64,000 nt of DNA from Podarcis muralis (Eukaryota): NCBI RefSeq assembly GCF_964188315.1, contig NC_135662.1:17484001-17548000 (forward strand), given 5' to 3'. Below the pieces are notes generated by a model. It ran no database searches. It was not told where the DNA came from and was given only the letters and a program-made list of their open reading frames with translations. Made by a program: the position numbers and the translations under genes. Below, in pieces: positions 35,825 through 62,804 of the stretch. Position 1 is the stretch's first letter, and each line of letters starts with the position of its first letter.

Positions 35825-36948
35825 GTGACTTTAGGTGGGACCTTTATTGGCATTGGACGCAAAACTCCAGATTGCCAGGGGAACACCAAGTATTTCCGCT
35901 GCAAGTTCTGCAATTTCACCTACATGGGCAATTCATCGACAGAGCTGGAGCAACACTTCTTGCAGACCCACCCAAACAAGATAAAATCCACCGTTCCTGC
36001 CTCTGAATCCAGCAAAGCCTCAGACAGGAACTTGAGCAAATCCAGTCCTACTGTTCGATCATGTGAGGCTGCAGATTTGGGGAAGTGGCAGGACAAGATC
36101 ACCATTAAAGCAGGAGATGACACTCCAGTTGGTTACTCAGTTCCCATCAAACCTCTCGAATCCTCAAGACAAAACGGTACGGATGCCTCCAGTTACTACT
36201 GGTGCAAATTCTGCAGCTTTAGTTGTGAATCATCCAGCTCACTGAAACTGTTAGAACATTACAGCAAGCACCATGGGGGGAGCCAGGCAGGGGGCCCTCA
36301 CCCAGATCGGAATGACAAGCTCTCAAGGGGGTCGGTCATTAATCATAATGACTTAGCCAAAAATTCAGATGGAGAGTTAGCAACAAAGACTGAGAAGGGC
36401 TCTAGCGTGGCCAAAAAGAAAGACTTTTCCAGCTCAGGAGTGGAGGACAACATGGTGACAAGCTACAATTGTCAGTTTTGTGATTTTAGATACTCTAAGA
36501 GCCATGGCCCAGATGTAATAGTGGTGGGGCCTCTTCTTCGTCATTATCAGCAGCTACACAACATTCACAAGTGTACCATTAAGCACTGTCAGTTTTGTCC
36601 CCGAGGCCTCTGTAGTCCAGAAAAGCACCTTGGAGAAATTACTTATCCTTTTGCTTGCAGGAAAAGTAATTGTTCCCACTGTGCTCTCTTGCTCTTGTCC
36701 CCTGGGATGCCAGGAGGCTCCAGAGTCAAGCACCAGTGTCACCAGTGCTCTTTCTCCACCCCCGATGTAGACGTTCTCCTGCTTCACTATGAAACCACAC
36801 ATGAAGCCCAGGCGACTGAAGTCAAGCAAGAAGCTAATGCCCCGCAAGGGTTGGATGGGCTGCTGAGTGTCAAAGAAAGCAAAGACCACACGTGCACCAA
36901 ATGTGACTTTGTCACTCAGGTAGAAGAGGAGATTTCTCGACACTACAG
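35825..36948 (+). CDS. TRPS1: TRPS1 coding exon (1124 nt), [29 protein letters not shown]...EEISRHYR, several C2H2 fingers
   Basis: ORF 35825-36952. Acceptor tttcatctttcatAG, donor AG|gtaaaa at 36949. Finger motifs CKFC..HFLQTH, CKFC..HYSKHH, CQFC..HYQQLH, CHQC..HYETTH. Phase 0 start, phase 2 end. Confidence 0.97.
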
Positions 36949-37371
36949 GTAAAAAAAGAGAAGTGATTGTGTGTGCTATTTAGCATTAAGGTTTAAATGT
37001 GGGAGCTTAAGGTTTAAATATGGGAGCTTGCCTACACATAGGACCCGTTCAGATGCTTATCCAGCTTTTGATCCCTTCAGACAATTGCAAGCATTCATGC
37101 CTTTCCATGTGGAAATAAGGTAACAACTGATGTGAGGCCTCTGTTTGTGTAATTTCTCTCTCCTCCCTTTTGGGTGAGAAGACACCAAGGAGCCGCAAGC
37201 CGGGAGTATTTGCACTGTAGGTTCTCAAGAGCTACTGCCCTCAAATATGATTGCCAAGGGCTAGCCATTGTGGTGCCCTCTAGTGATTGTTGGGTTGCAG
37301 CTCCCATCAGCCCCAGCCACTGTGGCCAATGGTCAGCAGTGATGGGAGTTGTAATCCAACAGCATCTTGAG

Positions 37372-54423: not shown

Positions 54424-54927
54424 AAGGGTTTCCCAAACTTGGATCTCCAGCTGTTTTGGGACTAGTAAAGGCAAAGGGACCCCTGACCATTAGGTCCAGT
54501 CGTGACCGACTCTGGGGTTGCGGCGCTCATCTCGCTTTATTGGCCGAGGGAGCCGGCGTACAGCTTCCGGGTCATGTGGCCAGCATGACTAAGCCGCTTC
54601 TGGCGAATCAGAGCAGTGCACGGAAACGCCGTTTACCTTCCCGCCGGAGTGGTACCTATTTATCTACTTGCACTTTGATGTGCTTTCGAACTGCTAGGTT
54701 GGCAGGAGCAGGGACCGAGCAACGGAAGCTCACCCCGTCGCGGGGATTTGAACCGCCGACCTTCTGATCGGCAAGTCCTAGGCTCTTTGGTTTAACCCAC
54801 AGCGCCACCCGTGTCCCGTGTTTTGAGACTACAGTTCCCATAATCCTGAGCTAGCAAGACCAGTGGTCAGGGATGATGGGAATAGTAGTCCAAAAACAGC
54901 TGGAGACCAAAGTTTGGGAAACCCTTG
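54424..54927. mobile_element. Hairpin hAT MITE carrying the nested Sauria SINE
   Basis: TIR aagggtttcccaaact / agtttgggaaacccttg, preceded by atctagag (54416-54423). Confidence 0.8.
54465..54817 (-). mobile_element. Sauria SINE nested in a hAT MITE
   Basis: Full body on the minus strand. TSD tgttttgggacta / tgttttgagacta (54452-54464 and 54819-54831). Confidence 0.92.
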
Positions 54928-55178: not shown

Positions 55179-55401
55179 GTCTAGAGCAGTGTTTCCCAAC
55201 CGGTGTTCCGCGGCACACTAGTGTGCCGCGAGACGTTGCCTGGTGTGCCGTGGGAGGGAGGCGGGCAAGTCGGGCGGCGAGAGGCGGGGCGGCGGCGGCG
55301 AGGATCCGCGTCGACCCGGGGGCAGCTCCGCGGTGGTGGTGCCGAGGTTTCTCTCTCCATTCTCCCCTCACACACACACACAGGATCAGCTGACAGGACT
55401 C

Positions 55402-55410
55402 GGCCAATGG
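55402..55410 (+). promoter_or_regulatory. CCAAT (NF-Y-type) box upstream of the captured ATG
   Basis: GGCCAATGG, with CCAAT at 55404-55408, about 70 bp upstream of ATG 55476 in CpG-island-like sequence. Motif only; function untested. Confidence 0.5.
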
Positions 55411-55475
55411 GGCGGCGGCGGGGCAGCGCGCGCAAAAGGGAGGAGCGCGAGACAGCGGACGAGGAGGAGGCCGGC

Positions 55476-55754
55476 ATGTCCGGGCAGCAGCAGCAACAAC
55501 AGCAGCAGCAACTCCCGGCGACGGCTCCTCAAGCCCCGGGCAACCCTACTCCCTCACCGGCCTCGGCCGCCCTCCTGCTCCACCCGCCGCCGCCTCCCCC
55601 GCCGCCGCCGGCCACCTCGGCCCCGCCGCCGCCCCCTCCTCCGCCCGCTATCGCCGCCACCACCACAACAGCCGCCGCCGCCTCAGCTGGGCCCATGCCT
55701 GCTGGGAGCGGCGGCGGCGGCAGCAGCAGCAGCAGCGCCCCGGCGCCCTTCCCT
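55476..55754 (+). pseudogene. RANBP9: Captured 5' fragment of RANBP9 (N-terminal Q/P/A-rich region) inside the hAT element
   Basis: Translation MSGQQQQQQQQQLPAT...SAALLLHPPPPPPPPPATSAPPPPPPPP...SSSSSAPAPFP. It has the same ordered motifs as recalled human RANBP9 (MSGQ..QQQQQQQQL..AAALLLHPPPPPPPATAAPPPPPPP..SSAAAPFPHGDS). Low-complexity sequence and identification from memory. Confidence 0.8.
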
Positions 55755-55774
55755 CCCGGCGTGACGCTGCGCGC

Positions 55775-55782
55775 TGACGTCA
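55775..55782. promoter_or_regulatory. Perfect CRE palindrome TGACGTCA in the hAT arm
   Basis: gcTGACGTCAcgggg, conserved in both copies of the element. Motif only. Confidence 0.4.
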
Positions 55783-55871
55783 CGGGGCTGTAATGGTGGT
55801 GTGCCTCAAGATTTTTTTCATCAAACAAGTGTGCCTTTGCCCAAAAAAGGTTGGGAAACACTGGTCTAGAG

Positions 55872-56025
55872 AGCCAACATGGAACAGTGGTTAGAGTGTC
55901 AAGCTTATTTATTGGCAGACCAGGTTCAAATCGCTACTCAGGGTGACCTTGGACCATTGTCTCACAGCCTTGGACCATTGTCTCACAGCCTAACCTACCT
56001 TTCAGTGTTATTGTGAGGAAAAAAT
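55872..56025 (+). mobile_element. Old MIR/Squam3-like SINE remnant with a 21-bp internal tandem duplication
   Basis: cagtggttagagtgtc...caggttcaaatc...gggtgaccttggacca...cagcctaacctacct...gttattgtgagga; duplicated unit at 55947-55988. Confidence 0.55.

Positions 56026-56355: not shown

Positions 56356-56364
<9 letters not shown>

Positions 56365-56392
<28 letters not shown>
56365..56392. repeat. (CA)n microsatellite
   Basis: Read directly from the sequence. Confidence 0.9.
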
Positions 56393-56395
<3 letters not shown>

Positions 56396-57249
56396 CATTG
56401 TACACGTCACACTTTACATCTGGAGCTTAATGTCAGCTAAAATGTTGCAGGCTTCTGATTCTTCTAAGTGACTTGGCACTTGCTTGGGGTGTGTGTGTGT
56501 ATGCATGTGTGCACATTTGTTTATTAGCTGCAAAGAACCAAAATGGAAAGGAAGGGGGGAGTATTCTTAATTAAAATTCTAAACTCCATTCCTCCCCTTT
56601 TTTCATCAGGCACTGATCAGAGATATTAGTCACATGTTTTATAGACTCGATCGTAATGGTTTTAAAAGCAAAAGAGCATGTGTTGAGCCTACTGATTTTT
56701 CCATAATGGAAAACTATATTAGGCTTTGCAGAAGTTTTAAATTTGGGCTTATTTTGAAATCCTTTGATGCCTTCAAGGACTGAAAACTTCACCACCCCTT
56801 AATCAGTTTGGCTTTGCCTCCCAAAAGCTGCCTCTGATGGTGTAGAATTGGGGAGGGGGGTCTCAAAAATGGCTGTGCATGGCAACTTTCAGGTTAGGTG
56901 TTTTATGCACAGGTATACATTTGTTTTTGTGACGGGTGTAGATTTGGAAACAGAGCAGTTGCTATGCTCGGTTGTTGTCTTACATAAACATTCCCTTCAG
57001 CCTCAGAGATAAGGAAGGATACAAAGGCAGAGCCACACCGAGTATGCTTCATGCACATCTATGTTGCGTCAATGCTTCCTGGAGTGAACACACCCATCTA
57101 ACATGCTTCTTTAATCACCTGTGTGCGTGCATTAGACTGGGAAGTTTAAACTCCAAAGCTTGAGGCTGGGACCTGCATGGTGAGCTACCATGGACTGTGT
57201 TTTAATTCAGACTTTGGATTCCTCTTCAGGCAAAGAGGGACGGGAATAG

Positions 57250-59834: not shown

Positions 59835-59969
59835 CAGTGATGGCCAAACTTGGCCCTCCAGTTGTTTTGGGACTACAATTCCCATCCTTCCTGACCACTG
59901 GTCCTGTTAGCTAGGGGTGATGGGAGTTGCAGTCCCAAAACAGCTGGAGGGCCAAGTTGGGCATCACTG
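59835..59969. mobile_element. Hairpin hAT MITE (135 bp)
   Basis: TIR cagtgatggccaaacttgg / ccaagttgggcatcactg. Perfect 8-bp TSD tactaaac. Confidence 0.88.
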
Positions 59970-60225: not shown

Positions 60226-61647
60226 TGGCATCTGTTTGGTAACTGTGGAATTAGGATGCTGGACTTGGTGGGTTAATGGCATGATCTGCTAGCAAGACTT
60301 TTCTTATATCGTGTTTAAGGTTTCACGAGCAAAACCCAGTCGAGCCAACTCACTTCCTTAGAGGGAACCCCAGAAGCACAAGGGTAAGAATCAGGCCCCT
60401 ACAACTAGTCCTTCTGTAACAAGAAAGGACTGAGGAATACAGCTCTGGATACAGCTTTTAGGGACCATAGAAGCCGTAGGGTGTCTGTCTTCAAGCCCTG
60501 GATGTTGCCACAACATGTATGAATGTTGTAGAATACTAAGTTGTGGAAGTGGGACACACGCACATACCCCGGCTCCCAGTGTATGGATGTTGTTGGCACA
60601 CAGAGGAGCCTGAAGCCTGAAACTCCTACTGCTGAAATCCTAATCAGGAATTAGAAGGAAAGGTGGGAGGTAGAGAAAGAGAATTGAGCAGTGTGAGAGG
60701 GATATGTCTGTAGTCTGAAAAAGCATTTTATTCATAATGACTCAAACCAAATGTTCAATAAACACTGATTTCTTCATTATTTTTTATTTTAATCCAGTCT
60801 TTTAACACTGCGACATCTGTGGCTTACTGAGCTGTGATGACACTTTTGACACAAACAAATGGATTTACAACTAGTCATGTTAGGTCAGGATGGTGTGAAT
60901 AGCCTATGGAAATAAGGTTGGAACTGGAAAAACAACATGCCTGTAATGCTGGTCTAGCGAAATGACAGTGTCACTTCTCAGTGTTTTAACGTTTGTCAAC
61001 TGCATGTTACTCTCTTTGTCCCTCAGGATGGCAGAATTTCCTGCATCCATTCATTTCCAAAATAGAGATGATCTTTTCTTGATATCTCTCCCCCCCCCAA
61101 ACCCCTCCACACACATACACAGCCTTCACTAGGTCTTATTAACAGATTGTATGCGTGAACACTTCAGGGTCTTGAATATTATTTCATTTTTCAGGCTCTT
61201 GCATTCTGTGCCTTCTTAGAAATAACAGAAAGGGGTGGGAGAGATTTCTGTCACTAAGTTGACTGCAAATTCCACAGCCAATGACAAGATGAAAAAGAAG
61301 CATTGAATGAGTGTAGAACACCCGTTTTTAAAAAATAGTGATGGTTTCTTGAAATGTGTTTGACATGTCCTCAGCTGAAGACAAGTGGATGTGGCAATTT
61401 TATTCAGCCTTTGTAAACTCCCACAAAAATGAGTTTGGAGTCCGATGCCTTTGAGGATTGTTATTAATTACAATTACACAATGCTGTTCAGTTTTTATAT
61501 AGGTTCGAATTCTGTGGAAATCAATGGCATTAAGCAGCCACACTGTCTCTCAGCATTGCTGCTTTGATCTTTTTTCACATCATTCCCCATGAGGTGGATA
61601 TGTAAAGCTGGGAGACCTGATGGTTGAGCAGGATCATGAACCTAGAC

Positions 61648-62341
61648 CAGTGTTTCCCAAATGTTTTTGGGCAACGGCACACCTGTTTACTAAAAAAAAA
61701 TCTCGCGGCACACCACCATTAAAGCCCCGCCCCGTGACGTCAGCGCGCAGCGTCACGCCGGGAGGGACGCACAAAAGTGAAAGTTTTTTCCCTCCCCCTT
61801 GCTGGGGAACCTCCAAGCTTTGGGGGTGGGAGGAGGCAGCAGAGCGAGGGACTGAGGGACGGCGGCAACTGAGGCGGCGGCGGCTGAGGCAGAGCTGGGA
61901 AGGGGGTTTCCAGGGGACACGGCAGCTCCTCGAAAGGCTTCTCTCAGCTGCGCTCAATCCGCCTCGGAGAGGATTTCCCCTCCGGTCCCATGCGTTCGTT
62001 TGGGGCATCGCTCCGGCTGCTCCCTCTCCCGCCGCGCAGGAGCGATGCCTCTCTCTGGCTTTCCCTCCGCGCAGGCTGAGGGAGGGAGGGAGGGGCGCGT
62101 GTGACCCGTCTCTGCTGGGAGACCAAACCCAGCGAGGCAGAGTCGCGCGGAGGCGCCCAGGCAGCGCTTCCGGCTGCGAGGAGGAGCGCCAGGCAACAGC
62201 AGGAGGCGCGGCCTCTCCTCGCCGCCGCCGCCCCGCCTCTCGCCGCCCGACTCGCCCGCCTCCCTCCAGGCATCTCGCGGCACACGAGGCAACGTCTCAC
62301 GGCACACTCGTGTGCCGCGGAACACCGGTTGGGAAACACTG
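61648..62341 (-). mobile_element. Non-autonomous hAT element (Pack-type), copy 2 with a different cargo (694 bp), inverted relative to copy 1
   Basis: TIR cagtgtttcccaa ... ttgggaaacactg. Perfect 8-bp TSD acctagac (61640-61647 and 62342-62349). Arms 61648-61767 and 62216-62341 match the copy 1 arms in reverse complement. Confidence 0.92.
61724..61742. promoter_or_regulatory. GC box plus CRE in the hAT arm
   Basis: gccccgcccc (61724-61733; reverse complement GGGGCGGGGC) is adjacent to TGACGTCA (61735-61742). Motif only. Confidence 0.4.
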
Positions 62342-62804
62342 ACCTAGACCTCTCAAGTCTTATCTCCAGAAATTCCAAGAAGAAGGATGATAACTGCAGC
62401 TGCAACCATCTGTTTGGACTTGAATAGGCTTTGAAAATGATGTGGGTAGCATTCAACTAAGCTTCACATAGTGCGGACCGATTGAAATTAATTAACGTAG
62501 CCAAGTTATGTCCTTTAATTTCAATTGATCTACTCCCCCATGATTTCCAGCTTATATTGTGAGATGCTCTAGTTAATTTTGCCAAACATTTCACTTGGCT
62601 CTTGGAATTGAATGCTGACTCAGGTGATTGACTCAGGGCTTTTACAGGCCCTCTGTCTGGTCTCCCTGTAGTTTTGGTGGAGTTTCTGGCAGTGAGACCA
62701 GGGATAACCGACATATTATCTGTGATATGGCAATATCCTCCTTCGATCCCCATAAATTGTGAGATTACAGTTCAGTATATTCATTGCTTTTTTTTTACCC
62801 AAGC

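What the first reader, a model, noticed from the sequence alone, without database searches (positions are those of the whole stretch)
55187..55863. Pack-hAT transposon that has captured the 5' end of RANBP9
SEEN: a 677-bp element with hAT-style TIRs and a perfect 8-bp TSD (gtctagag) sits in an AT-rich TRPS1 intron. Its CpG-rich interior (55305-55749) contains a CCAAT box, a GA-rich leader and an ATG in good context (gccggcATG, 55476). That ATG opens MSGQ-polyQ-L...AALLLHPPPPPPPPPATSAPPPPPPPP...SSSSSAPAPFP. KNOWLEDGE (recalled): human RANBP9/RanBPM, a CTLH-complex scaffold, begins with the same motifs in the same order and continues APFPHGDSALNEQE towards its SPRY domain. Gene-fragment capture by non-autonomous DNA transposons is well known in plants (Pack-MULE, Pack-CACTA) and reported much less often in animals. 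INFERENCE: the fragment was captured at the DNA level, since it keeps upstream promoter-like sequence and has no poly(A). It was then mobilised as a unit, since it has its own TSD.
Basis: partly seen in the sequence, partly recalled or inferred. Interest (0 to 1): 0.92.

Follow-up and report, generated by a model that had tools for sequence, protein, structure and literature searches.

The report
hAT transposon carrying RANBP9 gene start
A 677-bp cut-and-paste (hAT) transposon in a wall-lizard-like genome has had its middle replaced by the start of the host gene RANBP9, a rare vertebrate example of the gene-fragment "Pack" transposons best known from plants.

Summary
Window 55187-55863 is bounded by perfect 15-bp inverted repeats (CAGTG...) and a perfect 8-bp target duplication (GTCTAGAG). 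These are typical hAT features.

The ORF from 55476 matches the first 93 residues of Podarcis RANBP9 almost exactly. The differences are three substitutions and a few repeat-length changes. After ...APFP it leaves the gene and reads into the transposon arm. At DNA level, 55451-55755 aligns to RANBP9 exon 1 of three distant squamates at 74-78% identity.

A second element at 61648-62341 has the same arms (86-90% identical) and its own duplication. Its 448-bp GC-rich middle is unrelated, so this is a family with exchangeable cargo.

Three Podarcis muralis database proteins read RANBP9 exon 1 straight into the same inverted repeat. They end on three different nTCTAG targets, so RANBP9-hAT chimeras sit at other loci too.

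Not shown:
- Whether the 146 bp upstream of 55451 comes from RANBP9.
- Whether capture was at DNA level.
- The copy number of this exact structure.

This scan had already noted the same element type on other DNA of this genome (at least 12 RANBP9 notes, two followed up).

Pack-hAT elements in animals were described in 2021. This is a new member of a known kind, notable for being multicopy.

The parts
55179..55186 (.). Left copy of the 8-bp target-site duplication, GTCTAGAG
   Evidence: family D14. It is identical to 55864-55871 and fits the hAT nTnnnnAn / central CTAG target.
55187..55201 (+). 5' terminal inverted repeat, CAGTGTTTCCCAACC, with terminal motif CAGTG (YARNG)
   Evidence: 0 mismatches; I5.
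55187..55304 (+). 5' arm (118 bp), shared with the second element. It holds GTGTGCC/GGCACAC subterminal motifs, a 22-nt perfect palindrome at 55209-55230, and a GC-rich inner part at 55256-55304.
   Evidence: 89.7% identical to 62216-62341 on the opposite strand.
55305..55450 (+). Upstream part of the cargo, origin not established. It is CpG-rich and holds a CA repeat and a CCAAT motif.
   Evidence: No significant alignment to the RANBP9 upstream regions of L001, L003 or L004 on either strand. It is absent from the second element.
55451..55755 (+). RANBP9-derived cargo: at least 25 nt of 5' UTR plus codons 1-93
   Evidence: BLASTN to Lerista RANBP9 (L003): 78%, E=6e-61. Sphaerodactylus (L004): 77%, E=1e-51. 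L001: 74-76%, E=1e-50.
55476..55793 (+). Chimeric ORF of 105 codons plus stop. Residues 1-93 are RANBP9. Residues 94-105 (PGVTLRADVTGL) are read from the 3' arm.
55750..55755 (+). 3' junction: TCCCTC belongs both to RANBP9 (codons F-P-H) and to the arm, a 6-bp microhomology. With one mismatch the shared stretch extends to 55761.
   Evidence: One search compares copy 1, copy 2 and three squamate RANBP9 genes. The lacertid gene DNA itself was not available, so this is inferred.
55750..55863 (+). 3' arm (114 bp), shared with the second element. It holds a TGACGTCA palindrome and two GTGTGCC motifs.
   Evidence: (85.8% identical to 61648-61767 on the opposite strand).
55849..55863 (-). 3' terminal inverted repeat, the exact reverse complement of the 5' one
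55864..55871 (.). Right copy of the target-site duplication, GTCTAGAG
61648..62341 (-). Second family member (694 bp, opposite orientation). It has the same arms, an unrelated ~448-bp GC-rich cargo (about 61768-62215), and its own 8-bp duplication ACCTAGAC at 61640-61647 and 62342-62349.

Best explanation
This is a non-autonomous hAT DNA transposon of the 'Pack' type.

- Its two arms (118 and 114 bp) carry everything a hAT transposase needs: a 15-bp inverted repeat starting CAGTG and repeated GTGTGCC subterminal motifs.
- Its interior has been replaced by about 445 bp of host CpG-island DNA.
- The downstream 305 bp of that cargo are the 5' UTR end and the first 93 codons of RANBP9.

The most likely route (inferred, not shown) has three steps.

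1. During repair or replication of a family member, DNA synthesis switched template from the element to the RANBP9 CpG island and back.
2. The switch was guided by short GC-rich homology. The 3' junction lies in a 6-bp stretch, TCCCTC, shared by gene and arm.
3. A hAT transposase supplied in trans then cut and pasted the loaded element into a CTAG-centred target here, in a repeat cluster of what looks like a TRPS1 intron, making the 8-bp duplication.

The fragment lacks the SPRY, LisH and CTLH domains. It is a disordered N-terminal stub, not a gene copy. Any effect would come from the dispersed CpG-island DNA, not from the protein.
For: - hAT hallmarks: perfect inverted repeat and 8-bp duplication, terminal CAGTG, five GTGTGCC/GGCACAC motifs confined to the arms.
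- A sibling element 5.8 kb away has the same arms, its own duplication and different cargo. The arm/cargo borders are at 55304/55305 and 55749/55750.
- RANBP9 origin, protein level: near-identity to Podarcis RANBP9.
- RANBP9 origin, reference check: the squamate exon-1 ORF P0001 hits human RANBP9 chain 7nsc_A at E=1e-41.
- RANBP9 origin, DNA level: alignment to three squamate RANBP9 loci.
- Microhomology at the 3' junction.
- Other loci: three P. muralis UniProt models (P0273, P0275, P0276) end ...HYKG-WETL-V/F/I. This is RANBP9 exon 1 read into GGTTGGGAAACACTG and then G/T/A-TCTAG.
- Youth: CpG observed/expected is 0.86 in the cargo against 0.37 in the window, with intact repeats and duplication.
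- Precedent: PMC8277862 reports 208 Pack-hAT in animals with microhomology at breakpoints.
Against: - No second copy with this exact cargo could be fetched as DNA. Mobilisation after capture therefore rests on the related P. muralis chimeras and on unchecked notes of this scan.
- 146 bp of cargo (55305-55450) could not be assigned to RANBP9 or to anything else.
- The lacertid RANBP9 locus DNA was not obtainable. The junction microhomology is therefore inferred from the Podarcis protein plus gecko and skink DNA.
- No autonomous hAT partner is in the window. The four ORFs scanned against Pfam gave no transposase domain.
- A 23-nt exact match between the inner 5' arm and the RANBP9 upstream region of a distant squamate is unexplained. 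It hints that part of the 'arm' is itself old cargo.
Confidence: 0.85

Rival explanations
1. Filling in place. An ordinary member of this hAT family inserted here first and made the duplication. Later a break inside it was repaired by copying a piece of RANBP9. In that case the cargo was never mobilised.
For: Tan et al. found that most animal Pack-TIRs are single-copy and arise this way. A TSD alone cannot tell the two routes apart.
Against: - RANBP9-TIR chimeras occur at three or more other P. muralis loci with different targets.
- A Logan contig holds a slightly different copy of the same RANBP9 piece.
- Earlier scan notes report many copies of similar size (unchecked).
- TRPS1 and RANBP9 are not known neighbours, whereas filling in place favours nearby donors.
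Confidence: 0.07
2. This copy is a secondary deletion derivative. A longer ancestor carried a larger RANBP9 segment (promoter, whole exon 1, perhaps intron). The present 3' junction would then be an internal deletion between cargo and arm, not the original capture junction.
For: - The P. muralis models carry RANBP9 exon 1 right up to the splice donor, joined directly to the terminal repeat. So there are at least two 3' breakpoints for one gene.
- Scan notes mention copies with 121 codons and a 4-kb copy (unchecked).
- Abortive gap repair commonly shortens hAT elements (PMC3014272).
Against: The unrelated cargo of the second element meets the 3' arm at the very same base. That fits a preferred switching point in the arm better than a chance deletion.
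Confidence: 0.3
3. RNA-templated capture. The repair polymerase copied the 5' end of RANBP9 mRNA or pre-mRNA, not chromosomal DNA.
For: - All demonstrable RANBP9 sequence (from -25 to codon 93) lies inside exon 1.
- The other chimeras end within 2 nt of the exon 1 splice donor.
Against: - No spliced junction is present to prove an RNA template.
- The GT after ...AAAG in those chimeras could be intronic.
- The established models for Pack-TIRs are DNA-templated.
Confidence: 0.08
4. The resemblance to RANBP9 is low-complexity convergence (polyQ, polyP, polyA, polyS).
For: - Much of the ORF is homopolymeric.
- PDB and Atlas searches with the ORF alone found nothing.
Against: - A 28/28 match in the non-repetitive segment with composition-adjusted E=5e-12.
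- Collinear order of all motifs, and identity that falls with phylogenetic distance.
- DNA alignments with E from 1e-51 to 6e-61, including the 5' UTR.
Confidence: 0.01

Closest known systems
Pack-TIR / Pack-hAT elements of animals (Tan et al. 2021, Nat Commun, PMC8277862), e.g. Pack-hAT-N8_XT of Xenopus tropicalis carrying 291 bp of the CAPSL 5' UTR
   Same: - A non-autonomous hAT with the interior replaced by a few hundred bp from the 5' end of a host gene.
- Microhomology at a breakpoint.
- Distinct TSDs at different loci.
- GC-rich cargo.
   Different: - That survey found only 4 multicopy cases in 100 genomes (3 frog, 1 alligator).
- It found none in its only lizard (anoCar2: 0 Pack-TIRs, 77 TIR elements considered).
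- Here one window holds two family members with different cargo joined at the same arm positions. Other loci carry the same gene with other breakpoints.
Pack-MULEs of rice and other grasses
   Same: - TIR transposons that copy gene fragments, preferentially GC-rich ones (PMC5861414), and amplify them.
- They produce chimeric ORFs.
   Different: - They belong to a different superfamily (Mutator, 9-11 bp TSD, long TIRs).
- They occur in plants, in thousands of elements, and often hold several gene pieces.
hobo_AC and other hAT families of Anolis carolinensis (Novick et al. 2011, PMC3014272)
   Same: - Young lizard hAT families with 8-bp TSD and YARNG termini.
- Many non-autonomous derivatives.
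- Documented incorporation of extraneous 'filler' DNA.
   Different: - The Anolis filler is mostly other repeats, and those elements are 1.3-3.4 kb.
- No capture of gene 5' ends is reported there.
- No sequence relationship to this family was tested.
Helitron gene and promoter capture in vespertilionid bats (PMC4224331)
   Same: A vertebrate DNA transposon that picks up promoters and first exons and spreads them.
   Different: Rolling-circle mechanism, no TIRs, no 8-bp TSD.

Membership tests
hAT superfamily (non-autonomous member) | 8-bp target-site duplication | tested here: met
   GTCTAGAG on both sides. The sibling element has ACCTAGAC on both sides.
hAT superfamily (non-autonomous member) | Short terminal inverted repeats with terminal motif YARNG (PMC3014272) | tested here: met
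   15-bp perfect repeat starting CAGTG.
hAT superfamily (non-autonomous member) | Target preference nTnnnnAn, with a CTAG core in Charlie-like elements (the latter from my own knowledge) | tested here: met
   GTCTAGAG here and GTCTAGGT for the sibling read in the same orientation. Three P. muralis chimeras end on G/T/A-TCTAG. The sample is small.
hAT superfamily (non-autonomous member) | Mobilised by a transposase with a DDE core and hAT dimerisation domain that recognises these ends | not testable with these tools
   No autonomous copy is in the window. No lizard genome collection can be searched.
Pack-TIR / Pack-hAT (sense of PMC8277862) | TIR-transposon ends on both sides of an interior that is not transposon sequence | tested here: met
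   Arms are shared with a second element and the interiors are unrelated.
Pack-TIR / Pack-hAT (sense of PMC8277862) | Interior duplicated from an identifiable parental host locus that still exists | tested here: met
   Residues 1-93 match full-length Podarcis RANBP9 (P0274, 693 aa; P0180). DNA matches squamate RANBP9 exon 1. Only 305 of 445 bp of cargo are assigned.
Pack-TIR / Pack-hAT (sense of PMC8277862) | Multicopy class: the same chimera at several loci with distinct TSDs | tested here: inconclusive
   Related RANBP9-TIR chimeras occur at 3 loci, but with another 3' breakpoint. Exact look-ups of this copy's ORFs found nothing. Earlier scan notes claim many copies (unchecked).
RANBP9 gene duplicate (functional paralogue) | SPRY, LisH and CTLH domains | tested here: not met
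   The ORF leaves RANBP9 after codon 93, before the LNEQEKEL...SPRY region, and stops 12 codons later.
Processed retrocopy | Poly(A) tail, 3'-biased cDNA, L1-type flanking repeats | tested here: not met
   It is a 5' fragment only, has no A-run, and is bounded by hAT repeats with an 8-bp TSD.

The most novel reading that the evidence does not exclude
The element belongs to a lacertid hAT family that works as a serial shuffler of CpG islands and first exons.

- Its GC-rich inner arms act as fixed landing pads for template switching into open, GC-rich gene starts.
- Different 5' ends (RANBP9 here, an unidentified island in the sibling, others noted elsewhere in this genome) are therefore loaded at the same arm positions as cassettes of about 450 bp.
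- The loaded elements are then amplified to high copy number.
- This would scatter promoter-competent CpG islands (CCAAT, CRE-like TGACGTCA) through introns such as this one. It would be a vertebrate counterpart of Pack-MULEs on a scale not reported in animals.
Probability: 0.35. Interest if true: 0.85.

Novelty: new member of a known kind. Interest (0 to 1): 0.62.

Why it matters
- Transposons that copy pieces of genes and spread them are a recognised source of new exons, promoters and small-RNA targets in plants. In animals they were catalogued only in 2021.
- That survey found almost all of them single-copy and immobile. A young, mobile lizard family that repeatedly loads gene starts would be a natural system to study how capture happens. 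It would allow tests of fixed junctions, microhomology and GC bias.
- It would also allow a test of whether dispersed CpG islands create new transcription start sites in host genes.
- There is a practical point for annotation. At least three UniProt/Ensembl 'proteins' of Podarcis muralis, one of them named RANBP10, are readings of such elements, not genes.

Tried and rejected
Searches that found nothing useful:
- PDB phmmer with the ORF alone gave only a chance hit.
- The ESM Atlas search with the ORF gave low-scoring low-complexity look-alikes.
- Rfam and tRNA scans of 54.3-62.5 kb found nothing above threshold in the element.
- Pfam on four of the window's largest ORFs found no transposase.
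- ORFs of the sibling's cargo show no recognisable gene start.
- Literature search for the terminal repeat and for the two run accessions gave no papers.

Attempts to fetch the lacertid RANBP9 locus or other copies as DNA:
- The look-up of encoding contigs failed for P0180, P0272 and P0273.
- Exact look-ups of five window ORFs were all absent from the collection.
- The third protein search found no further lacertid RANBP9.

Tests of whether 55305-55467 is the RANBP9 promoter:
- Local alignment against the L001 island on both strands, with shuffles, gave z of about 0.
- BLASTN and MAFFT against skink and gecko showed no convincing homology beyond -25.

Readings rejected:
- That the window holds the real RANBP9 exon 1. 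The ORF runs into the arm and no exon follows.
- That this is a retrocopy.
- That the match is low-complexity coincidence.

Full report
**Observation**

The sequence is as described.
- CAGTGTTTCCCAACC lies at 55187-55201, and its exact reverse complement lies at 55849-55863.
- These repeats are flanked by GTCTAGAG at 55179-55186 and 55864-55871.
- The terminal CAGTG fits the YARNG motif. The 8-bp duplication fits the hAT superfamily as defined for lizard elements in PMC3014272.
- Five copies of GTGTGCC/GGCACAC lie only in the outer ~60 bp at each end, like hAT subterminal transposase-binding repeats.
- The interior is 75% G+C with CpG observed/expected 0.86. The window averages 42% and 0.37. 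The element has therefore not undergone the CpG decay of its surroundings.

**Limits of the cargo**

A second element lies 5.8 kb downstream at 61648-62341, in the opposite orientation.
- It has its own 8-bp duplication, ACCTAGAC.
- Aligned to the first element, it shares 118-126 bp at one end (89.7% identical) and about 115-120 bp at the other (85.8% identical).
- Between the arms the two elements are unrelated: about 445 bp in the first and about 448 bp in the second.
- Two different cargoes of nearly equal length meet the arms at the same bases. This argues for preferred switching points in the arms.

**Is the cargo RANBP9?**

The ORF from 55476 has 105 codons. A word-indexed search with it found a 153-aa ORF, P0001, on a 2.2-kb Logan contig, L001.
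- P0001 continues ...APFPHCGDPALNEQEKELKRRLKRLYP... and matches human RANBP9 chain 7nsc_A at E=1e-41.
- L001 therefore holds a genuine RANBP9 exon 1 with a splice donor and 1.5 kb of upstream DNA.

A profile search then recovered RANBP9 of Podarcis lilfordi (P0180). Its cluster also holds RANBP9 of P. muralis (P0274, 693 aa).
- The window ORF is identical to P0274 at 90 of 93 residues and to P0180 at 87. The differences are mostly one or two units in the Q, A/T and G/S runs.
- Composition-adjusted BLASTP gives 28/28 identities in the non-repetitive stretch LPATAPQAPGNPTPSPASAALLLHPPPP, E=5e-12.
- Identity falls in phylogenetic order: Podarcis 0.88-0.89, Pogona and Lerista 0.71-0.73, Sphaerodactylus 0.66, kiwi 0.57.
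- At DNA level, 55451-55713 aligns to Lerista RANBP9 (L003) at 78% (E=6e-61). 55458-55695 aligns to Sphaerodactylus (L004) at 77% (E=1e-51). 55468-55761 aligns to L001 at 74%.

Low-complexity coincidence is excluded. The genes continue APFP-H-G-G-D, whereas the element reads APFP-P-G-V-T from the arm and stops 12 codons later. No SPRY, LisH or CTLH region is present.

**Junctions**

At the 3' junction the gene reads TTCCCTCAC-GGCG (gecko; similar in skink and L001). The arm, as seen in the sibling element, reads GTCCCTCCC-GGCG.
- The stretch 55750-55755 (TCCCTC) is therefore common to both, and after one mismatch five more bases agree.
- This is the kind of microhomology reported at about two thirds of animal Pack-TIR breakpoints (PMC8277862).
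- The source of the sequence at the 5' junction is unknown.

**What could not be shown**

RANBP9 homology is demonstrable only from 25 nt upstream of the ATG, in the block GCGGACGAGGAGG..CCGGCATG shared with Lerista.
- The remaining 146 bp of cargo (55305-55450), with the CA repeat and CCAAT motif, gave no alignment better than shuffled controls. This holds against any of the three squamate upstream regions on either strand.
- Those promoters also do not align with each other beyond about -107, so the negative result is weak.
- Capture at the DNA level is the standard model, but it is not demonstrated here.

**Was the loaded element mobile?**

A TSD does not settle this, because filling of a resident element in place leaves the old TSD (PMC8277862). 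The evidence found here is indirect but independent.

The cluster of Podarcis RANBP9 contains three short P. muralis UniProt entries: P0273, P0275 (named RANBP10) and P0276.
- They read RANBP9 exon 1 to its last codons ...LRVHYKG, then WETL, then V, F or I, then stop.
- GGT TGG GAA ACA CTG is exactly the 3' terminal repeat of this family read outward. GTC/TTC/ATC followed by TAG is an nTCTAG target.
- These are therefore three further insertions at different sites. They carry RANBP9 exon 1 with a different 3' breakpoint, at the splice donor and joined to the terminal repeat itself.

A Logan contig (L002) also carries the same RANBP9 piece with a 12-bp deletion and one substitution, in another context. 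It may be an assembly chimera.

Exact look-ups for this copy's own ORFs found nothing. I could not reach any lizard genome by DNA search, so the copy number of this exact structure is untested here.

This scan had already noted the same kind of element on other DNA of this genome. There are at least 12 notes naming RANBP9, and others naming PPAT, SIX5, SPR and CRPPA. Two were followed up, with claims of tens to hundreds of copies. I treat those as leads only.

**An unexplained detail**

The GC-rich inner part of the 5' arm is shared by both elements. It contains 23 nt that match L001 exactly (22/23 in the first element).
- The match is on the opposite strand, about 300 bp upstream of the RANBP9 ATG.
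- No dinucleotide shuffle of 1000 exceeded 15 nt.
- The 23-mer is absent from the skink and gecko loci.
- Either the inner 'arm' is itself a remnant of an older, inverted RANBP9-promoter capture, so the sibling's cargo replaced an earlier RANBP9 cargo, or the L001 species carries a related remnant.
- I cannot decide between these without the lacertid locus.

**Context**

- An ORF at 35825-36949 (+) looks like the TRPS1 zinc-finger exon (Atlas score 0.95, 177 shared features). Pfam gave only weak C2H2 hits.
- The element therefore probably lies in a TRPS1 intron, with the RANBP9 fragment in the same orientation as the gene.
- It sits inside a cluster of other repeats, not in plain intron.

**Comparison with what is known**

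Tan et al. (PMC8277862) found 370 Pack-TIRs in 100 animal genomes.
- 208 of them had hAT ends, and only four were multicopy.
- One multicopy case is a Xenopus hAT carrying 291 bp of the CAPSL 5' UTR.
- Their only lizard yielded none, because hardly any TIR elements were considered there.
- Anolis hAT elements are known to take up filler DNA (PMC3014272).
- Pack-MULEs prefer GC-rich gene sequence (PMC5861414).

No paper in the searched library describes gene-carrying hAT elements in lacertids. The element is thus a new member of a known kind.

The points of interest are mobility after loading, recurrence of one gene with several breakpoints, and different cargoes joined at identical arm positions.

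**Verdict**

Confidence in the Pack-hAT/RANBP9 reading is 0.85.

Noticed in passing
window 61648-62341 (TSD 61640-61647 and 62342-62349): A second member of the same hAT family in opposite orientation. The arms are 86-90% identical, and the unrelated ~448-bp GC-rich cargo has no recognisable gene start.
   Followed up: partly
proteins P0273, P0275, P0276 (Podarcis muralis UniProt A0A670JJD6, A0A670HZA3, A0A670IIJ6): Three annotated 'proteins', one named RANBP10, are RANBP9 exon 1 read into the hAT terminal repeat (…HYKG-WETL) and stopped by the TAG of an nTCTAG target. They look like transposon copies mis-annotated as genes.
   Followed up: partly
window 55256-55278 and 62242-62264; L001 1219-1241: A 23-nt exact match (22/23 in copy 1) between the inner 5' arm and the antisense strand ~300 bp upstream of RANBP9 in a distant squamate contig. 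0 of 1000 shuffles reach it. It is absent from the skink and gecko RANBP9 loci.
   Followed up: partly
L002 1-1751 (Logan ERR14042001): The contig starts 15 nt before the RANBP9-type ATG and matches the cargo to codon ~49, with a 12-bp deletion. It then continues into a different CpG island with a first-exon-like ATG and GT donor, followed by 1.2 kb of unique AT-rich DNA without hAT arms. It is either a rearranged copy or an assembly chimera.
   Followed up: partly
window 54424-54926: A ~500-bp GC-rich block bounded by inverted AAGGGTTTCCCAAAC repeats (3 mismatches to the hAT repeat). By eye, its interior looks like a squamate tRNA-derived SINE on the minus strand. ARAGORN finds no tRNA.
   Followed up: no
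window 55947-55988: A perfect tandem duplication of a 21-bp unit (CCTTGGACCATTGTCTCACAG) just downstream of the element, inside what looks like another short repeat.
   Followed up: no
window 59860-59945 and 56362-56514: Near-palindromic hairpins with sub-threshold matches on both strands to microRNA families (mir-5408 at 49 bits against a cutoff of 90; mir-3149 at 41 against 100). They are probably hairpin-forming miniature transposons.
   Followed up: no
window 35825-36949 (+): A 375-codon ORF whose nearest Atlas cluster carries the TRPS1 zinc-finger Pfam families. It is probably the large TRPS1 exon, which places the element in a downstream intron in the same orientation.
   Followed up: partly
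window 55209-55230: A 22-nt perfect palindrome (GCGGCACACTAGTGTGCCGC) in the 5' arm, made of two opposed GTGTGCC motifs around CTAG.
   Followed up: no
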